The notes beneath the pieces are model-generated. The model saw only the letters and a program-made list of their open reading frames with translations. It did no database searches and was not told where the DNA came from. Position numbers and translations under genes: made by a program. This document shows, piece by piece, positions 5,563 through 62,736 of a DNA stretch of 64,000 nucleotides (position 1 is its first letter; every line of letters starts with the position of its first letter). The DNA lies in the IMG/VR virus record IMGVR_UViG_3300023181_000025, positions 147,169 to 211,168 of that record; one strand, given 5' to 3'.

Positions 5563-6799
5563 TTTAAATAAAAAACAACGGGCCGCGATTAATTTAATTA
5601 AGCTTGGCAGTAATGTATTGGTAACGGGGGCGGCAGGTGTAGGCAAGTCTTATTTGGTAAGTGAAATTATTGGAGAATTTACAGATTTTCATATTACTTC
5701 CTCTACAGGAATTTCTGCCGTAAATATTGGAGGTCGCACAATTCACAGTTGGGCAGGAATAGGAATTGCTATCGGGACAAAAGAACAAATTTATAATGAA
5801 CTTTCTAAAAGAAAGCATGTTGTTCTAAAGATTAGAAAAGCTAAACGTCTTATTCTAGACGAAATATCAATGATAGACGCAGATCTACTAGATAAAATCG
5901 AATATGTTTTAAGGCGTATCAAGGGAAATCATAAGCCATTCGGTGGAATTCAAATGGTATTTTTTGGGGACTACTTGCAGCTTCCGCCCGTTAGCAGAGA
6001 GGGAGAAGAAGAAAAAAGATTCTCTTTTGAAGCGGAGTCTTTTAATAATAGCAATGTGAAAATTATTGAGTTGACGGAAGTTATTCGTCAAAGTGATGAG
6101 AGTTTTATTAAAGCTCTTCATAAAATTCGAATGGGGAATGTTGACCAACCAACTAAAGATCTATTTAATAGTAGGCTCGGGAAAAAGCCATCCAAAGATA
6201 TTTTGGCAACTCATTTAATGACTCATAATTATATGGTCGATAGGGTAAACGATAAAAAGCTTGCGGCAATTAATCTTCCAAGCAAAAACTTCAAATGGTC
6301 TAAGGGAGGGGCGGATGCGGCGCTAAATATGCTGGAGAAAAGCTGCCCAGCCCTAGAAACTCTTGAACTAAAAATTGGGGCGCAGGTTATATGCTTAAAA
6401 AACATTGATCCCGCCAAAGAAATTGCAAATGGTAGCGTTGGGAAAGTAACTGGATGGTCTGCGGACGGGCCAATTGTTAAATTTAATAATGGAGAAGAGA
6501 TTTCAATTAAAAAAGCTCTTTGGGAAATTAAAGAATTTAAAGGCGACAAGCAGGTTGTGACTGCATGGATTGAGCAATTCCCTCTTAAGTTAGGATGGGC
6601 CTCAAGTATTCACAAAGCGCAAGGCCAAACAATCGACCATGCAGTAATTAACCTAAAGAGTTGCTTTGAATGTGGTCAGGCTTATGTCGGACTATCTCGA
6701 ATTAAAAATCTTAATGGAATATATTTGGAAGATATTGACTGGGACAAAGTTATCGCTCACCCAAAAGCTGTGGAATTTTACGAGAATCTTAATAAGTAA
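5555..6799 (+). CDS. Pif1/RecD-like SF1B DNA helicase
   Basis: GAAGVGKS, LILDEISM, PFGGIQ..FGDYLQLPPV, QFPLKLGWASSIHKAQG, GQAYVGLSR. Confidence 0.95.
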   Translation: MDNLNKKQRAAINLIKLGSNVLVTGAAGVGKSYLVSEIIGEFTDFHITSSTGISAVNIGGRTIHSWAGIGIAIGTKEQIYNELSKRKHVVLKIRKAKRLILDEISMIDADLLDKIEYVLRRIKGNHKPFGGIQMVFFGDYLQLPPVSREGEEEKRFSFEAESFNNSNVKIIELTEVIRQSDESFIKALHKIRMGNVDQPTKDLFNSRLGKKPSKDILATHLMTHNYMVDRVNDKKLAAINLPSKNFKWSKGGADAALNMLEKSCPALETLELKIGAQVICLKNIDPAKEIANGSVGKVTGWSADGPIVKFNNGEEISIKKALWEIKEFKGDKQVVTAWIEQFPLKLGWASSIHKAQGQTIDHAVINLKSCFECGQAYVGLSRIKNLNGIYLEDIDWDKVIAHPKAVEFYENLNK

Positions 6800-9886: not shown

Positions 9887-10041
9887 TTTATTATGAAAAA
9901 TATTTTTAAAATTATTGGAATTATTTTTATATCTCCTTTTATGGTTATCCATTTTATCGCGTGGTATTCATTCAATTCATTTCTTGGGGGAACATTAAAC
10001 TATAAAAAATGGGGGCACGCTCCATTAAATCTTCCTTAATT

Positions 10042-11202
10042 ATGAATAATCTAACGCAATACCCCGAGCCGCCGAACCCTGACGCCGTGATACTCGGGCC
10101 GGGAGGGAGCTTCAAAGTGCCGGAGAGCTTAGCAGGCTTTCAAGGATGGGCATTTTATGAAGACGGAAGAGGCTGGGATGGGCCATATTGGCAACACGGA
10201 GAGTGCCCCCGAGCCATCTACGCCGCACGCCGCGATTCGGACGTGGTGAGGCTGAATATTCCTGATCACCTCGACATTGACGGCGATCCTCCGGACCATC
10301 GGACGTATAGGCACGAGGAAGCAGAAGATTTACCGCCGGAAAAAACATCGCCCGTAGCAAAGAGCGGCCTGCCGCCATACTTTCAGGAAGATGTCACGGT
10401 TGAGGAGCACGAGGCCGACTTGGGGGCGTTTTTAAATGCCATGGAGAAGCAGCACCCGAAAGACGTTTTTCGTGAGTGCGACAAGTGCGAGTCTTTAGGT
10501 GCTCAACTCGTCTGTGGAGACACCGGGCAGTGCTGCGCGGAGAACGGCGAACGGAAATTCCTGCATCTGGCTGCACAAGGATTGAAGCCGCTTACCGACG
10601 AGGAAGTTCAAAGGTGGGCTGACACGGCATTCACCAAGTTTACCACCCCACCCCTTGCCGGTTCAGGGAAGGGGGAGGCGGGGACTCCGAGAGGAATGAG
10701 GGAGTGTCACCGCACGTTCATGGAAATGTTCCCATGGCTGGACAAACAATTCTCCAGCTACGACGAGTGGATAGTTTCCGACGACGACCACGCACGATCA
10801 TTCCGCCAAGGATGGGCGGCCAACACCAGGGCTCTCGCCTCAGCGCGGGCGGAGATCGAGGACATTAGAACCTTCGCGCAGAAATTACAGGATGATGTTC
10901 GTTCACTTTGCGGAACGCCGGTCGGAGTCTCGACCCGAGACGGCATTTCCTTGCTCAAGGCAGAGATCGAGAGGCTGAGGGGTGCGCCAGTCACAATCGA
11001 CGGTAGGAACTTTAAGACGCCGCTTGAGGCCTCCCTGCATCTGCTTTGGCTGCTGCAACGCCTGAGCTATTACGAGCCGCACCGCGAAGGAATGCCCGCA
11101 GACGGCCCACGATTCCGCCAAGGGATCATTGAGTCCCGCAAACTCCTTTCCACCATTGGATACATGAAGGAAGCCACCAACGCGGGAGGCTCCGGTGAGT
11201 GA
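10042..11202 (+). CDS. Mosaic hypothetical protein on a GC-rich island
   Basis: Visibly higher GC than flanks; N-terminal domain resembles repeats of ORF 33244. Confidence 0.7.
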   Translation: MNNLTQYPEPPNPDAVILGPGGSFKVPESLAGFQGWAFYEDGRGWDGPYWQHGECPRAIYAARRDSDVVRLNIPDHLDIDGDPPDHRTYRHEEAEDLPPEKTSPVAKSGLPPYFQEDVTVEEHEADLGAFLNAMEKQHPKDVFRECDKCESLGAQLVCGDTGQCCAENGERKFLHLAAQGLKPLTDEEVQRWADTAFTKFTTPPLAGSGKGEAGTPRGMRECHRTFMEMFPWLDKQFSSYDEWIVSDDDHARSFRQGWAANTRALASARAEIEDIRTFAQKLQDDVRSLCGTPVGVSTRDGISLLKAEIERLRGAPVTIDGRNFKTPLEASLHLLWLLQRLSYYEPHREGMPADGPRFRQGIIESRKLLSTIGYMKEATNAGGSGE

Positions 11203-11617
11203 GCTTCTGCCATGCCCGTTTTGCGGAAACAGTGCTATAATTAGAAAATATGATGGTGAATGGTATATCCGCTGTTACGGAAATGGAAGTTGTCATGCTA
11301 ATCCGTTTTACGCAGATCCAGACCGAGAAATAGTTTGTAAACGCTGGAACACCCGCGCCCCGTCAGCCGGTGAAGCAGAGGTTAGGGGAGAGCTAAAGCG
11401 AATCAAAGTCCACTTTGCCGAAGATATGGTTGACAAACGAGAGGAAATGCGCGCATTACGTTCGATAGCTGATAAACTTGAAGAGGCGGGAACATTTCTT
11501 CGTCAAGATTTAGAATTAGAATTAATTGATAGAAGACAAATTAATACCTCTAAATGGTGCTCCCTAGTAAATTGGAACGAAGTTTTGGCCGAATACGCTG
11601 TGTTTAAAAACGAGTAA
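11195..11617 (+). CDS. Lar-family restriction alleviation zinc-finger protein with coiled-coil tail
   Basis: ELLPCPFCG...YIRC...C...WNTRA. Confidence 0.75.
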   Translation: MSELLPCPFCGNSAIIRKYDGEWYIRCYGNGSCHANPFYADPDREIVCKRWNTRAPSAGEAEVRGELKRIKVHFAEDMVDKREEMRALRSIADKLEEAGTFLRQDLELELIDRRQINTSKWCSLVNWNEVLAEYAVFKNE

Positions 11618-12610: not shown

Positions 12611-13095
12611 AGATATTTAATACAATTTTATTTAGCCGCAAAAGAGTCGAATTGGGCGGCGATAGCCACATTATTCAATATACTATCTTTGAAAATAAGA
12701 AATTTGGTGGAATTTGGTTTTATAACTGGGGAAAAGTAGGGTCAAAATCGGAGACCGGAGGAACAAGATTTCACACTCATGCATTTAATTCGTTTTGTTT
12801 TACTCTCAAAGGGTCATATGATCAAGAAGTAATTGATGAGAATGGAATAAAAAAAGAACGCGTGCGAAAATTGTTTAGGCCTAGGTTTCTACCCCGTAAT
12901 TATACCCACAGGATTACCAATGCAGCGCCCGGCACTTGGACTTGTGTGATTTTCGGTAAGTGGTCTAAGTTTTGGTTTGAGTATTTCCAAGATACAAATA
13001 CATGGGTTCAATTTAGTCACGGAAGAAAAGTTATTGACAAAATTACTAATTCCACATATTCTCAAATTAAAGAATTAATAAAAAATGAGCAATGA
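12607..13095 (+). CDS. Cupin-fold protein
   Basis: FHTHAF...LKGSY.QE...HRI. Confidence 0.7.
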   Translation: MKIFNTILFSRKRVELGGDSHIIQYTIFENKKFGGIWFYNWGKVGSKSETGGTRFHTHAFNSFCFTLKGSYDQEVIDENGIKKERVRKLFRPRFLPRNYTHRITNAAPGTWTCVIFGKWSKFWFEYFQDTNTWVQFSHGRKVIDKITNSTYSQIKELIKNEQ

Positions 13096-54489: not shown

Positions 54490-54661
54490 AATGGATACTA
54501 ATGGAAATAAAACACTTTATTGTTTCTACGGTGGCACAAATAGGAAAATCCAAACAAATGGAAATCTACCGCGCACCCACAATGACGGCATCGGACCTTG
54601 GACGCAAAGGGAAATTTTGGATTATTTTCAATCCGGAAGGGATCGCATTGCGAATCCGTAA
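54479..54661 (+). CDS. Hypothetical protein
   Basis: IQTNGNLP.TH. Confidence 0.65.
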   Translation: MKIRMDTNGNKTLYCFYGGTNRKIQTNGNLPRTHNDGIGPWTQREILDYFQSGRDRIANP

Positions 54662-54678
54662 ATATTTATTTTAACAAG

Positions 54679-54803
54679 GTTGGTGAGCAGCACGGAAAGC
54701 AGACGTGCGGGACTAGAGAAATCCGCGAACGGCAGGACAGAGGCCCCTCTAGGGTAGCGACCGTTGAGCATAATCCGATTAGCGCCGGATCTCACTAACG
54801 CCA
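54679..54803 (+). ncRNA. tRNA-like RNA with 9-bp acceptor stem, extended variable arm and encoded G-CCA
   Basis: GTTGGTGAG/CTCACTAAC followed by G-CCA; GCACG/CGTGC; AACGG/CCGTT; ATCCG/CGGAT. Confidence 0.65.
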
Positions 54804-54866: not shown

Positions 54867-55265
54867 ATGCAATTCTTTTCGGACCTATGGGAAATATTTA
54901 GCAATAAGCCGCCCATTGAAAATTCGTCTCGGCTTGAGGAAACAAAAAATTCAAATGAGTTATTTTTTTCTGTGGTGTCATTTAGCGGGGAATACTATGT
55001 CTTAATGGTAAGGTTAGGGAATAGGGCGTGGAAATACGTAAAAGAAACTCGTGGCGACCGTTATGACAGTTTAAGGATTCTTAGTCGTTATGATCAGCCT
55101 GTTTTGGGACGCTTTGAAGAGTTGAAAACTTTGGCGAAAAAATATAAACAAAATCCTAATCTTTATTACGAATTTATTGCTCAAGAGGATAAAAAATATA
55201 ACGATGCACGGGAAAGAATTTTAAATAAAGAAAAGGAATATCGCAGCAAAACCTTTGAAATCTGA
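54867..55265 (+). CDS. Hypothetical protein
   Basis: Tiling. Confidence 0.6.
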   Translation: MQFFSDLWEIFSNKPPIENSSRLEETKNSNELFFSVVSFSGEYYVLMVRLGNRAWKYVKETRGDRYDSLRILSRYDQPVLGRFEELKTLAKKYKQNPNLYYEFIAQEDKKYNDARERILNKEKEYRSKTFEI

Positions 55266-60603: not shown

Positions 60604-60751
60604 TTGGCCCGCTGGAGCTTTCCAAGCATAACGATTATAACGCGGAGTTAATCGCCCGCCCCGCTCTAAAAGGCCGAAAGGGGGAAAGGCCAACAATTTT
60701 CTTGCAACTCTAAATAAATCACTTACCTTTCATTCATAACCAACTAACACC

Positions 60752-62250: not shown

Positions 62251-62736
62251 ATGTCATTGCCAACCCCTGCTAGCGTTAAATTTATCCTTCGCGAAGAGCC
62301 ATTAGCTTATTGCCCGCGCGAGCTTAAGCTAGACACGCCGGAAAGGATAAATGATTTCCTTAAAACCGTTGTGGCCACAGATGGATCATTCGAGGCGGGT
62401 AAGGAAAATTTGATTTTGATTTGTTTGGATGCTCGTTTGAATTTCACGGGATATTCTATTCTATCGGTTGGAACATTGACAGAGACCGCCGCGCATCCTC
62501 GCGACATTTTCCGCGCCGCGATACTGGCAAATGCATGCTATTTCATTTTGGCTCACAATCACCCAAGCGGGGAAGTAAGCCCTAGCCGGGCAGATGAGCA
62601 AATGACTAGAAAGGTTGACGAGGCCGCTGCAATCATGGGCATTCGTTTTTTGGATCATGTCATTTTTTCTACTGGCTACCCTACGCCCGGAAAATTGCCA
62701 TATTATTCCTTCAGGGAAGGCGGATTCATTCGTTAA
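62251..62736 (+). CDS. RadC-like JAB/MPN domain protein
   Basis: E....I.LD...GTL......PR.IF...AHNHPSG...PS.AD...LDHVI. Confidence 0.92.
   Translation: MSLPTPASVKFILREEPLAYCPRELKLDTPERINDFLKTVVATDGSFEAGKENLILICLDARLNFTGYSILSVGTLTETAAHPRDIFRAAILANACYFILAHNHPSGEVSPSRADEQMTRKVDEAAAIMGIRFLDHVIFSTGYPTPGKLPYYSFREGGFIR

What the first reader, a model, noticed from the sequence alone, without database searches (positions are those of the whole stretch)
54679..54803. Oversized tRNA-like RNA with 9-bp acceptor stem and encoded CCA
Seen: a GC-rich 125-nt segment after an AT-rich leader folds into a 9-bp terminal stem GTTGGTGAG/CTCACTAAC followed by G-CCA. It has a D-like arm GCACG-GAAAGCAGA-CGTGC, a weak arm GGA-CTAGAGAAA-TCC at the anticodon position, a 38-nt arm AACGG...CCGTT, and a T-like arm ATCCG-ATTAGCGC-CGGAT stacked directly on the acceptor stem. 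It lacks TTCG and a canonical anticodon arm. The two real tRNAs in this window do not encode CCA. Known: G73 with a long variable arm is Ser/Sec-type identity. Inference: a non-decoding tRNA mimic, such as a decoy for anticodon nucleases or tRNA-sensing defences, an aminoacyl donor, or an RNase P/Z processing signal.
Basis: partly seen in the sequence, partly recalled or inferred. Interest (0 to 1): 0.75.

Follow-up and report, generated by a model that had tools for sequence, protein, structure and literature searches.

The report
New widespread phage RNA, tRNA-shaped frame
The flagged 121-nt segment is a real, conserved structured RNA: a divergent member of a large phage and prophage small-RNA family that no database consulted here names, built as a constant tRNA-shaped three-helix frame around a hypervariable insert, but it is not a tRNA and its CCA end is a coincidence.

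Summary
Taken alone they are not significant: fold z = -1.0, and about 640 comparable 9-bp closing helices occur in this 211-kb phage genome. ARAGORN and Rfam find nothing there.

A search with the two hairpin loops as a DNA pattern then found over 170 homologues in IMG/VR viral contigs. More lie in cultured Pseudomonas and Ochrobactrum phages and, sporadically, in bacterial genomes.

All share three helices:
- P1, a closing stem of 7-9 bp or more.
- P2, 5 bp with loop GAAAGCAGA.
- P4, 5 bp with loop AKUWGCGC, stacked directly on P1.

Between P2 and P4 lies a 53-113-nt domain with no conserved sequence or fold. Covariation is very strong: 97.9% of cells paired, and 16 of 18 pairs with compensatory changes. 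A covariance model built without the window sequence finds window 54679-54799 at E = 2.5e-9.

No Rfam 15 family matches. Members often sit in tRNA arrays on the same strand, and some carry a tRNA-like module inside.

Most likely it is a stand-alone stable phage RNA matured with tRNAs: a constant frame that binds a conserved cellular partner, plus variable cargo. That mechanism is inferred, not shown.

The parts
54679..54687 (+). P1, 5' strand of the closing helix (GTTGGTGAG)
   Evidence: Pairs with 54791-54799. P1 covaries in the family with all four Watson-Crick pair types at positions 3-8 and 95-99% pairing. R2 aligns it as P1.
54688..54689 (+). Two-nucleotide linker CA between P1 and P2
   Evidence: The family has CG in 138, CA in 14 and other dinucleotides in 3 of 155 members.
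54690..54708 (+). P2 hairpin: 5-bp stem GCACG/CGTGC with 9-nt loop GAAAGCAGA (54695-54703)
   Evidence: The stem differs from the family consensus GCGUG/CACGC by compensatory changes. The loop is identical to the family's.
54709..54771 (+). Variable central domain (63 nt).
   Evidence: In the family this domain is 53-113 nt, has no conserved motif and folds into 1-4 predicted hairpins. The genome holds no antisense match longer than 12 nt.
54772..54772 (+). Conserved unpaired A before P4
   Evidence: A in 146 of 155 members.
54773..54790 (+). P4 hairpin: 5-bp stem ATCCG/CGGAT with 8-nt loop ATTAGCGC (54778-54785)
   Evidence: The stem is fully compensated relative to the consensus GCCGG/CCGGC. 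The loop variant AUUAGCGC is shared with 12 other members; AGUAGCGC occurs in 138.
54791..54799 (+). P1, 3' strand (CTCACTAAC), directly abutting P4
54800..54830 (+). Downstream hairpin GCCAC...GTGGC. It contains the 'G-CCA' and is not part of the conserved element.
   Evidence: Predicted by the fold in context. No CCA is conserved after P1 in the family.
54501..54674 (+). Upstream flanking ORF (57 aa), unknown function
   Evidence: No family match.
54867..55265 (+). Downstream flanking ORF (132 aa from the ATG at 54867), an ORFan
   Evidence: Only itself found among 5.8 billion proteins.

Best explanation
Window 54679-54799 (+) encodes a stand-alone structured small RNA. It is a divergent member of a large phage and prophage RNA family that is absent from Rfam 15.

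Shown:
- The family has a constant frame. P1 is formed by the two ends. A 2-nt linker follows. P2 has loop GAAAGCAGA. P4 has loop AKUWGCGC and stacks directly on P1.
- The frame encloses an insert of 53-113 nt that is hypervariable in length, sequence and fold. In a minority of members the insert is a tRNA-like cloverleaf.
- The family has no conserved protein neighbour.
- It is sporadic in bacterial genomes.
- It is transcribed from the strand given here.
- It often lies in tRNA arrays on the same strand.

Inferred mechanism: the RNA is transcribed with or like tRNAs, and its ends are made by the tRNA-processing nucleases. The P1/P4 coaxial stack and the P2/P4 loops form a tRNA-like 'top half' that makes it stable. 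The two constant loops bind a widely conserved cellular partner, such as a tRNA-handling enzyme or a tRNA-sensing defence protein. The insert is exchangeable cargo or a specificity module.

It is not a decoding tRNA and is probably not aminoacylated.
For: Family and membership:
- The loop-based pattern gave 6 viral loci, then 86 and 88 with relaxed patterns.
- That yields 155 unique elements.
- RNAalifold recovers P1, P2 and P4 de novo, with 16 of 18 pairs compensated.
- On 103 sequences, 97.9% of cells pair against 75.4% in shuffles and 33-44% when partners are slid. There are 385 double-change cells against 93 expected, reached by 0 of 500 shuffles.
- Model R2, built without the window sequence, hits window 54679-54799 at 55.9 bits, E = 2.5e-9. 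It hits nowhere else in the genome.

RNA strand: in inner pairs, G.U-type pairs outnumber A.C-type by about 37 to 9.

Not a known family: there is no Rfam hit for the window at E<=10. Twenty member loci give none at gathering score, and nine give none at E<=1.

Free-standing gene:
- The largest neighbour cluster is 7 proteins in 6 of 157 loci.
- In a Pfam census of 90 neighbours, no family occurs more than twice.

Mobile:
- Found in 1 of 151 genomes in a phylum sample and 2 of 41 in a family sample.
- Two copies occur in some phages, once in tandem.

tRNA link: same-strand tRNAs lie 3-360 nt away in 11 loci. The Rfam tRNA model hits inside the insert in L189, L156 and L150. A canonical T arm occurs in 10 of 155 inserts against 0.1 in shuffles.

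GC: the intergenic region is a GC outlier in this genome.
Against: - No expression data. The runs holding this phage are DNA only and show no variants.
- The partner, the processing and the stability are inferences from architecture and context.
- Loop invariance is partly an ascertainment effect, because the search patterns fixed those loops. Members found by other routes show small loop changes: POI1126 has GAAAGCGGA and GGUAGCGU; Persinger has GUUAGCGA.
- In the window itself the element is 13.7 kb from the nearest tRNA.
- The closest large relative of this phage has no copy in the syntenic 10 kb.
- Only about 8% of loci have an adjacent or internal tRNA.
Confidence: 0.5

Rival explanations
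1. A self-cleaving or tRNA-processing ribozyme. The constant junction and loops form a catalytic core, the insert is an optional domain, and the role is to release neighbouring or embedded tRNAs or to process phage transcripts, as theta (HDV-like) and hammerhead ribozymes do in phages.
For: The element is phage-restricted and independent of its neighbours. Its insert varies in length. tRNAs lie adjacent to it or embedded in it. Theta ribozymes next to phage tRNAs are a precedent (PMC10879173).
Against: The conserved nucleotides sit in two terminal hairpin loops rather than in junction strands or internal loops. No Rfam ribozyme model matches, even at E<=10. More than 90% of members have no tRNA to process.
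Confidence: 0.12
2. A cis-acting regulatory leader or boundary element. Candidates are a processive antiterminator like HK022 put or EAR, an attenuator, or an RNase processing or terminator structure acting on the flanking operon.
For: Members lie at module boundaries. In L104 the element directly precedes a NusG-like antiterminator gene. In PotUPM1 it lies beside the cI region. In L103 it is upstream of the terminase.
Against: There is no consistent downstream gene class or orientation. In Persinger it lies after the integrase, facing convergent genes. Tandem copies and tRNA-array positions fit a gene better than a leader. Only 10 of 154 members have a U-run after P1.
Confidence: 0.1
3. One reading: an aminoacylatable tRNA mimic of Ser/Sec type with an encoded CCA, acting as an aminoacyl donor or as a decoy for anticodon nucleases.
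For: The frame has tRNA-like topology, with the T-like arm stacked on the closing stem. This phage does carry an unusual Sec-shaped tRNA elsewhere, which shows that the detectors work on this genome.
Against: - CCA and the discriminator are not conserved.
- There is no T-loop or D-loop consensus.
- There is no conserved anticodon arm.
- tRNA, tRNA-Sec and tmRNA models and ARAGORN all fail.
- P1 length ranges from 7 to 22 bp.
Confidence: 0.05
4. A DNA-level site (attP, cos/pac or origin) rather than an RNA.
For: In Persinger the element lies directly after the integrase gene. Several IMG/VR members lie near contig ends.
Against: Helix sequences differ freely while pairing is kept, and G.U pairs are tolerated on one strand only. 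Positions in phage genomes are diverse. In L107 the prophage sits beside a tRNA, and the element lies 1.6 kb inside it.
Confidence: 0.03

Closest known systems
tRNA (Rfam RF00005) and tRNA-Sec / allo-tRNA-type long-stem tRNAs
   Same: A closing stem is formed by the two ends. A 2-nt linker leads to a D-like hairpin, and a 5-bp T-like hairpin stacks without a linker on the 3' strand of the closing stem. Members are often encoded in tRNA arrays on the same strand.
   Different: There is no anticodon arm; a hypervariable 53-113-nt domain takes its place. The loops are GAAAGCAGA and AKUWGCGC, not the D-loop GG and T-loop UUCRANY. There is no conserved discriminator or CCA. P1 is 7-22 bp. The CM and ARAGORN fail.
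tRNA-like domain of tmRNA, and bacterial Y RNA YrlA (own knowledge of these families; Rfam models tested)
   Same: These are RNAs in which a tRNA-like module is combined with a large non-tRNA insertion and the 5' and 3' ends pair. Some members here contain a genuine tRNA-like cloverleaf, as YrlA does.
   Different: There is no canonical T arm in the frame and no CCA. No tag reading frame or pseudoknots are conserved. No SmpB or Rsr linkage appeared among the neighbours. There are no Rfam or ARAGORN hits.
P4 CI / P1-P7 C4 antisense RNAs (Rfam C4 family; own knowledge: cloverleaf-like precursors cut by RNase P)
   Same: These are small stand-alone RNAs of temperate phages of Proteobacteria. A tRNA-like fold is used for maturation, and other parts carry the regulatory specificity.
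   Different: In C4/CI the loops are the variable, target-pairing parts. Here the loops are constant and the centre varies. There is no Rfam C4 hit, and no antisense target was found in this genome.
GOLLD and ROOL RNAs
   Same: These are phage-associated orphan structured RNAs that lie near tRNAs (PMC5737381, ROOL section). Their function is also unknown.
   Different: GOLLD and ROOL are several hundred nucleotides long with ornate conserved cores. This family has an approximately 57-nt constant frame. No Rfam match.
Theta (minimal HDV-like) ribozymes next to phage tRNAs (PMC10879173)
   Same: Small structured RNAs of phages that lie beside tRNA genes.
   Different: Theta ribozymes have a nested double-pseudoknot HDV fold. 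Nothing comparable is conserved here, and no HDV-type model matches.

Membership tests
The new family (P1-P2[GAAAGCAGA]-variable-P4[AKUWGCGC]-P1) | Significant match to a covariance model built from other members only | tested here: met
   R2 was built from 44 IMG/VR members without the window. It hits window 54679-54799 at 55.9 bits, E = 2.5e-9, over the full model 1-138.
The new family | Three helices P1, P2 and P4 in register, with P4 abutting P1 and a 2-nt P1-P2 linker | tested here: met
   The stems of P2 and P4 differ from the consensus by compensatory changes.
The new family | Loop sequences GAAAGCAGA (P2) and AKUWGCGC (P4) | tested here: met
   GAAAGCAGA at 54695-54703 and AUUAGCGC at 54778-54785.
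tRNA (RF00005) | Cloverleaf recognised by the covariance model or by ARAGORN | tested here: not met
   There is no hit at gathering score or at E<=10. ARAGORN finds nothing credible, even with relaxed scores or introns allowed. The 20 or more real tRNAs of this genome are found.
tRNA | Anticodon arm (5-bp stem, 7-nt loop) at a conserved position | tested here: not met
   The region is hypervariable in length and fold across the family.
tRNA | Conserved discriminator plus CCA, or a uniform 3' end after a 7-bp acceptor stem | tested here: not met
   N-CCA follows P1 in 8 of 154 members. P1 is 7-22 bp.
tRNA-Sec (RF01852) / Ser-type identity | Model match; long variable arm and G73 conserved | tested here: not met
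   There is no hit at E<=10. The same model scores 52 bits on another gene of this genome, which serves as a positive control. G73 and the arm are not conserved.
tmRNA | tRNA-like domain with a T arm and CCA, plus a tag reading frame | tested here: not met
   ARAGORN -m and Rfam find nothing.
YrlA / Y RNA | Rfam model match; linkage to rsr | tested here: not met
   There is no Rfam hit. No TROVE/Rsr protein appeared among 90 neighbours; RtcB appeared once.
C4 antisense RNA (P1/P7 c4, P4 CI) | Rfam model match; variable loops complementary to a nearby target | tested here: not met
   There is no Rfam hit. The loops are constant. There is no complementarity longer than 12 nt in the genome.
Known self-cleaving ribozymes (hammerhead, twister, twister-sister, pistol, hatchet, HDV-like) | Model match | tested here: not met
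   There is no Rfam hit at E<=10 for the window or at E<=1 for members.
Any self-cleaving ribozyme | Site-specific self-cleavage | not testable with these tools
   Needs an in vitro transcription and cleavage assay.

The most novel reading that the evidence does not exclude
This may be a new class of phage RNA: a natural 'tRNA scaffold'. A constant tRNA-shaped frame would be recognised by the host's tRNA machinery or by a tRNA-sensing defence protein. Phages of several bacterial phyla would use it to express and stabilise interchangeable RNA cargo, including whole tRNA-like modules. Alternatively it could titrate a conserved tRNA-binding factor during infection.
Probability: 0.3. Interest if true: 0.85.

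Novelty: categorically new. Interest (0 to 1): 0.78.

Why it matters
One unremarkable-looking 121-nt segment of a leaf-litter jumbo phage led to an RNA family with well over 170 members. They occur in viral metagenomes and in cultured Pseudomonas and Ochrobactrum phages. None of the public records I inspected annotates the element.

The covariation is as strong as for established RNA classes. The loop sequences are nearly identical in a 37.5%-GC jumbo phage that lacks Shine-Dalgarno sites and in approximately 60-65%-GC temperate phages of Proteobacteria. This points to a conserved cellular partner.

The constant frame around a free insert, and the occasional embedded tRNA, are unusual. They bear on how phages handle tRNAs, tRNA-targeting defences and RNA stability.

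Cultured phages carry the element, so its function can be tested at the bench now.

Caveat: an anonymous entry for it may already exist among the 8,495 IMG/VR candidate RNAs of PMC10690425. I could not check this, because no supplement text is held.

Tried and rejected
1. Thermodynamics: fold z-scores of -1.0 and 0.03 give no support.
2. The 9-bp stem as evidence: rejected, because the genome holds about 640 equivalent helices.
3. Close homologues were sought without success:
   - blastn against GenBank phages
   - an exact 23-mer in IMG/VR
   - flanking ORFs in IMG/VR
   - the downstream ORF in 5.8 billion proteins, which found only itself
4. Microdiversity: three leaf-litter runs hold identical sequence, so no variants are available.
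5. Distant DnaE relatives in IMG/VR (41-44% identity, 45 records): no hit with the single-sequence model R1.
6. RadC-anchored contigs L091 and L092 turned out to be unrelated phages.
7. Homologues of the 310-aa protein occur only on a 5.4-kb contig without the region.
8. I walked 79 kb of the 195-kb contig of the nearest large relative (DnaE 61%) to the RadC anchor. The syntenic 10 kb holds no homologue.
9. AT-rich matches downstream of the element are low-complexity noise.
10. Coding potential: the overlapping 66- and 67-aa ORFs have no family match. The reading frame is not preserved, because the insert length varies freely.
11. Antisense target of the variable domain in the own genome: none.
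12. E. coli genomes hold no member, and the plasmid matches are chance hits.
13. L109, L131, L232 and L247 were dropped from the analysis as likely chance hits: L109 lacks the P4 hairpin and the others lack the P1/P2 context seen in the listing.
14. Literature search by sequence words and by topic found no description of this RNA.

Full report
**Setting**

The window is the last 64 kb of a 211,168-bp IMG/VR virus record (Ga0247815_10000014). CheckV rates it complete. It was assembled from a leaf-litter metagenome.

The genome has 37.5% GC. ARAGORN finds 20 tRNAs, and Rfam adds two more. It encodes a DnaE-type polymerase and a terminase. Almost no genes have Shine-Dalgarno motifs. The nearest relatives share 50-71% DnaE identity and exist only as Logan, ENA or JGI contigs. 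IMG/VR holds nothing closer than 44%.

**Step 1: the observation**

The MFE fold keeps all three.

The element fills a 151-nt gap between a 57-aa ORF (54501-54674) and the next ORF (54813/54867-55265). That intergenic region is among the three GC-richest of 100 in the genome, above the regions that bear tRNAs.

From this sequence alone, nothing exceeds chance:
- The fold z-score is -1.0, and 0.03 in context.
- The genome has 336 (+) and 300 (-) helices of 9 bp with at most one G.U that close 100-135 nt.
- GC-rich islands are frequent.
- ARAGORN in all modes finds nothing. Rfam finds nothing at gathering score or at E<=10.

The CCA lies in the 5' strand of a separate downstream hairpin.

**Step 2: looking for relatives**

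All routes through close relatives failed; they are listed under Tried and rejected. I walked the 195-kb contig of the nearest large relative in six look-ups to the syntenic RadC anchor. I found neither the element nor its flanking ORFs there.

The breakthrough came from treating the two hairpin loops as the probable conserved parts:
- The pattern GGAAAGCAGAC-N60-90-GATTAGCGCC returned 6 IMG/VR loci.
- A 21-mer of the P2 hairpin returned three bacterial contigs.
- The single-sequence model R1 scored seven of these over its whole length at E of 6e-7 to 9e-5. Their closing stems had different sequences but stayed complementary.
- Two relaxed patterns then gave 86 and 88 loci, which reduce to 155 unique elements.

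**Step 3: anatomy of the family**

- P1 is the closing helix. Its modal length is 8-9 bp and its range is 7-22 bp. All four Watson-Crick pair types occur at positions 3-8, with 95-99% pairing.
- A linker follows: CG in 138 members and CA in 14. The window has CA.
- P2 is a 5-bp stem, GCGUG/CACGC in most members, with a 9-nt loop GAAAGCAGA.
- The central domain is 53-113 nt. It has no shared motif and folds into 1-4 predicted hairpins.
- A conserved A precedes P4.
- P4 is a 5-bp stem, GCCGG/CCGGC in most members. Its 8-nt loop is AGUAGCGC in 138 members, AUUAGCGC in 12 (the window among them) and AGUUGCGC in 5. P4 runs directly into the 3' strand of P1.

RNAalifold on 44 diverse members predicts exactly P1, P2 and P4, with 16 of 18 pairs showing compensatory changes.

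On 103 sequences aligned to R2:
- 97.9% of cells pair, against 75.4% in shuffles and 33-44% when partners are slid.
- There are 385 double-change cells against 93 expected.
- None of 500 shuffles reaches the observed values.

This alignment was fitted to the model. The MAFFT-based result agrees with it.

G.U-type pairs outnumber A.C-type by about 4 to 1 in inner pairs. The RNA is therefore read from the strand given.

Nothing is conserved after P1. N-CCA occurs in 8 of 154 members, a U-run in 10 of 154, and the tail is merely G-poor.

One caveat applies. The patterns fixed the loops, so their invariance is partly ascertainment. Members found through P2 alone have P4 loops AGUAGCGC, AGUUGCGC, GUUAGCGA and GGUAGCGU. 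One has GAAAGCGGA in P2. The loops are therefore strongly conserved but not absolutely.

**Step 4: membership of the window element**

R2 was built without the window sequence. It finds window 54679-54799 at 55.9 bits, E = 2.5e-9, end to end. It finds nothing else in the genome or in the 79 kb walked in the relative.

Relative to the consensus, the P2 and P4 stems of the window element are fully compensated, and both loops are the family's. The conserved element is therefore 121 nt (54679-54799).

**Step 5: context**

- Neighbouring proteins are not conserved. The largest cluster is 7 proteins in 6 of 157 loci.
- In a Pfam census of 90 neighbours, no family occurs more than twice. The families seen are ordinary phage functions: integrase, ERF, terminase, portal, SSB and lysis enzymes. 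RtcB appears once.
- In Pseudomonas phage Persinger the element directly follows the integrase gene. In PotUPM1 it lies beside the cI region. In Ochrobactrum phage POI1126 it lies between small genes next to the capsid module. It is unannotated in all three records.
- In bacteria it is sporadic. It was found in 1 of 151 genomes of a phylum sample and 2 of 41 of a family sample, both counts including the query genome Massilia oculi, which has two copies. The filters in those searches were strict.
- Some phages carry two copies, once in tandem with 8 nt between them.
- In 11 of 155 loci a tRNA lies within 400 nt, always on the same strand, and in three cases only 3-12 nt away.
- In L189, L156 and L150 Rfam's tRNA model scores 41-48 bits inside the variable domain.
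- Ten of 155 inserts have a canonical 5-bp T arm with UUCRANN, against 0.1 in shuffles.
- Two members lie beside other orphan Rfam motifs: Proteo-phage-1 and DUF3800-IX.

**Step 6: what it is and how it may work**

Shown: this is a free-standing, mobile, strand-specific structured RNA gene of phages. It has a constant three-helix frame and an exchangeable centre.

The frame copies the topology of a tRNA's acceptor/T-arm stack plus D arm, but none of the tRNA's recognition sequences.

Inferred, at about 0.3-0.35 for the mechanism and about 0.95 for the identity as a conserved RNA:
- The RNA is made and trimmed like a tRNA.
- The frame gives it stability.
- Its two constant loops engage a partner conserved across bacterial phyla.
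- The insert is cargo or a specificity module.

**Step 7: comparison with what is known**

Rfam 15 has no matching family for the window or for typical members. tRNA, tRNA-Sec, tmRNA, YrlA, C4 and the ribozyme models all fail. The tRNA-Sec model does fire on another gene of the same genome, which acts as a positive control.

Sequence-word and topic searches of the literature found no description. A catalogue of 8,495 anonymous IMG/VR candidate RNAs exists (PMC10690425) and may contain it or parts of it. Its supplements are not held.

**Verdict**

The finding leads to a large RNA family that I could not match to any named family. Interest 0.78.

Noticed in passing
Outside the window: genome 83083-83168 (L006:3083-3168): A tRNA gene missed by ARAGORN matches Rfam's tRNA-Sec model at 52 bits. 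It has a 9-bp acceptor stem, a 6-bp D stem with a 4-nt loop and a long variable arm. Its anticodon loop UUGGAAA gives anticodon GGA (Ser). It looks like a Sec-shaped or allo-tRNA-like seryl tRNA.
   Followed up: partly
Outside the window: genome 81855-81932 (L006:1855-1932): Rfam's tRNA model scores 49.5 bits here, with 17 extra nucleotides in the anticodon-loop region. This may be an intron-bearing or otherwise unusual tRNA. ARAGORN does not call it.
   Followed up: no
Outside the window: genome 91899-91973: A tRNA with anticodon CTA, i.e. an amber suppressor; ARAGORN labels it Pyl. It suggests TAG recoding in part of this phage's genes.
   Followed up: no
Outside the window: genome 79726-80412: A 228-aa PolyA_pol-family protein (CCA-adding-enzyme-like) is encoded inside the tRNA cluster. 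It is 53% identical to one on Logan contig L093.
   Followed up: no
Outside the window: genome 13560-16298 (L002): The terminase large subunit is 912 aa. Its family matches split into residues 31-150 and 451-783, which suggests an inserted domain or an intein.
   Followed up: no
window 10009-11202: A 397-aa ORF has GC up to 0.69 over 1.2 kb in a 37.5%-GC genome and no PHROG match. It was probably acquired horizontally.
   Followed up: no
window 11203-11425, window 60604-60751, and genome 1687-1791: These are other GC-rich intergenic regions of this phage (0.46-0.52 GC) that contain no predicted tRNA. They are candidates for further structured RNAs.
   Followed up: no
window 62251-62736: A RadC-like JAB-domain protein (Pfam E = 8e-34). 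It is conserved at 48% in the nearest large relative and served as the synteny anchor.
   Followed up: partly
L104:4355-4448 and L189:6608-6682: Members of the new family lie directly downstream of other orphan phage RNA motifs: Proteo-phage-1 (RF03044, 64.5 bits) and DUF3800-IX (RF02968, 49.2 bits). This suggests clusters of non-coding RNA genes in temperate phages.
   Followed up: no
L172:1705-1844 and 1852-1988; L144:11778-11930 and 12617-12759; L169:6223-6362 and 6426-6586: These viral contigs each carry two copies of the family. In L172 the copies are in tandem, 8 nt apart, as in tRNA arrays.
   Followed up: partly
L100:945-1200 (relative's contig, logan:SRR33465453_2486): The relative's early region has a small basic ORF followed by a classical intrinsic terminator: a GC-rich stem followed by a T-run. 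No such terminator follows the element in the window.
   Followed up: no
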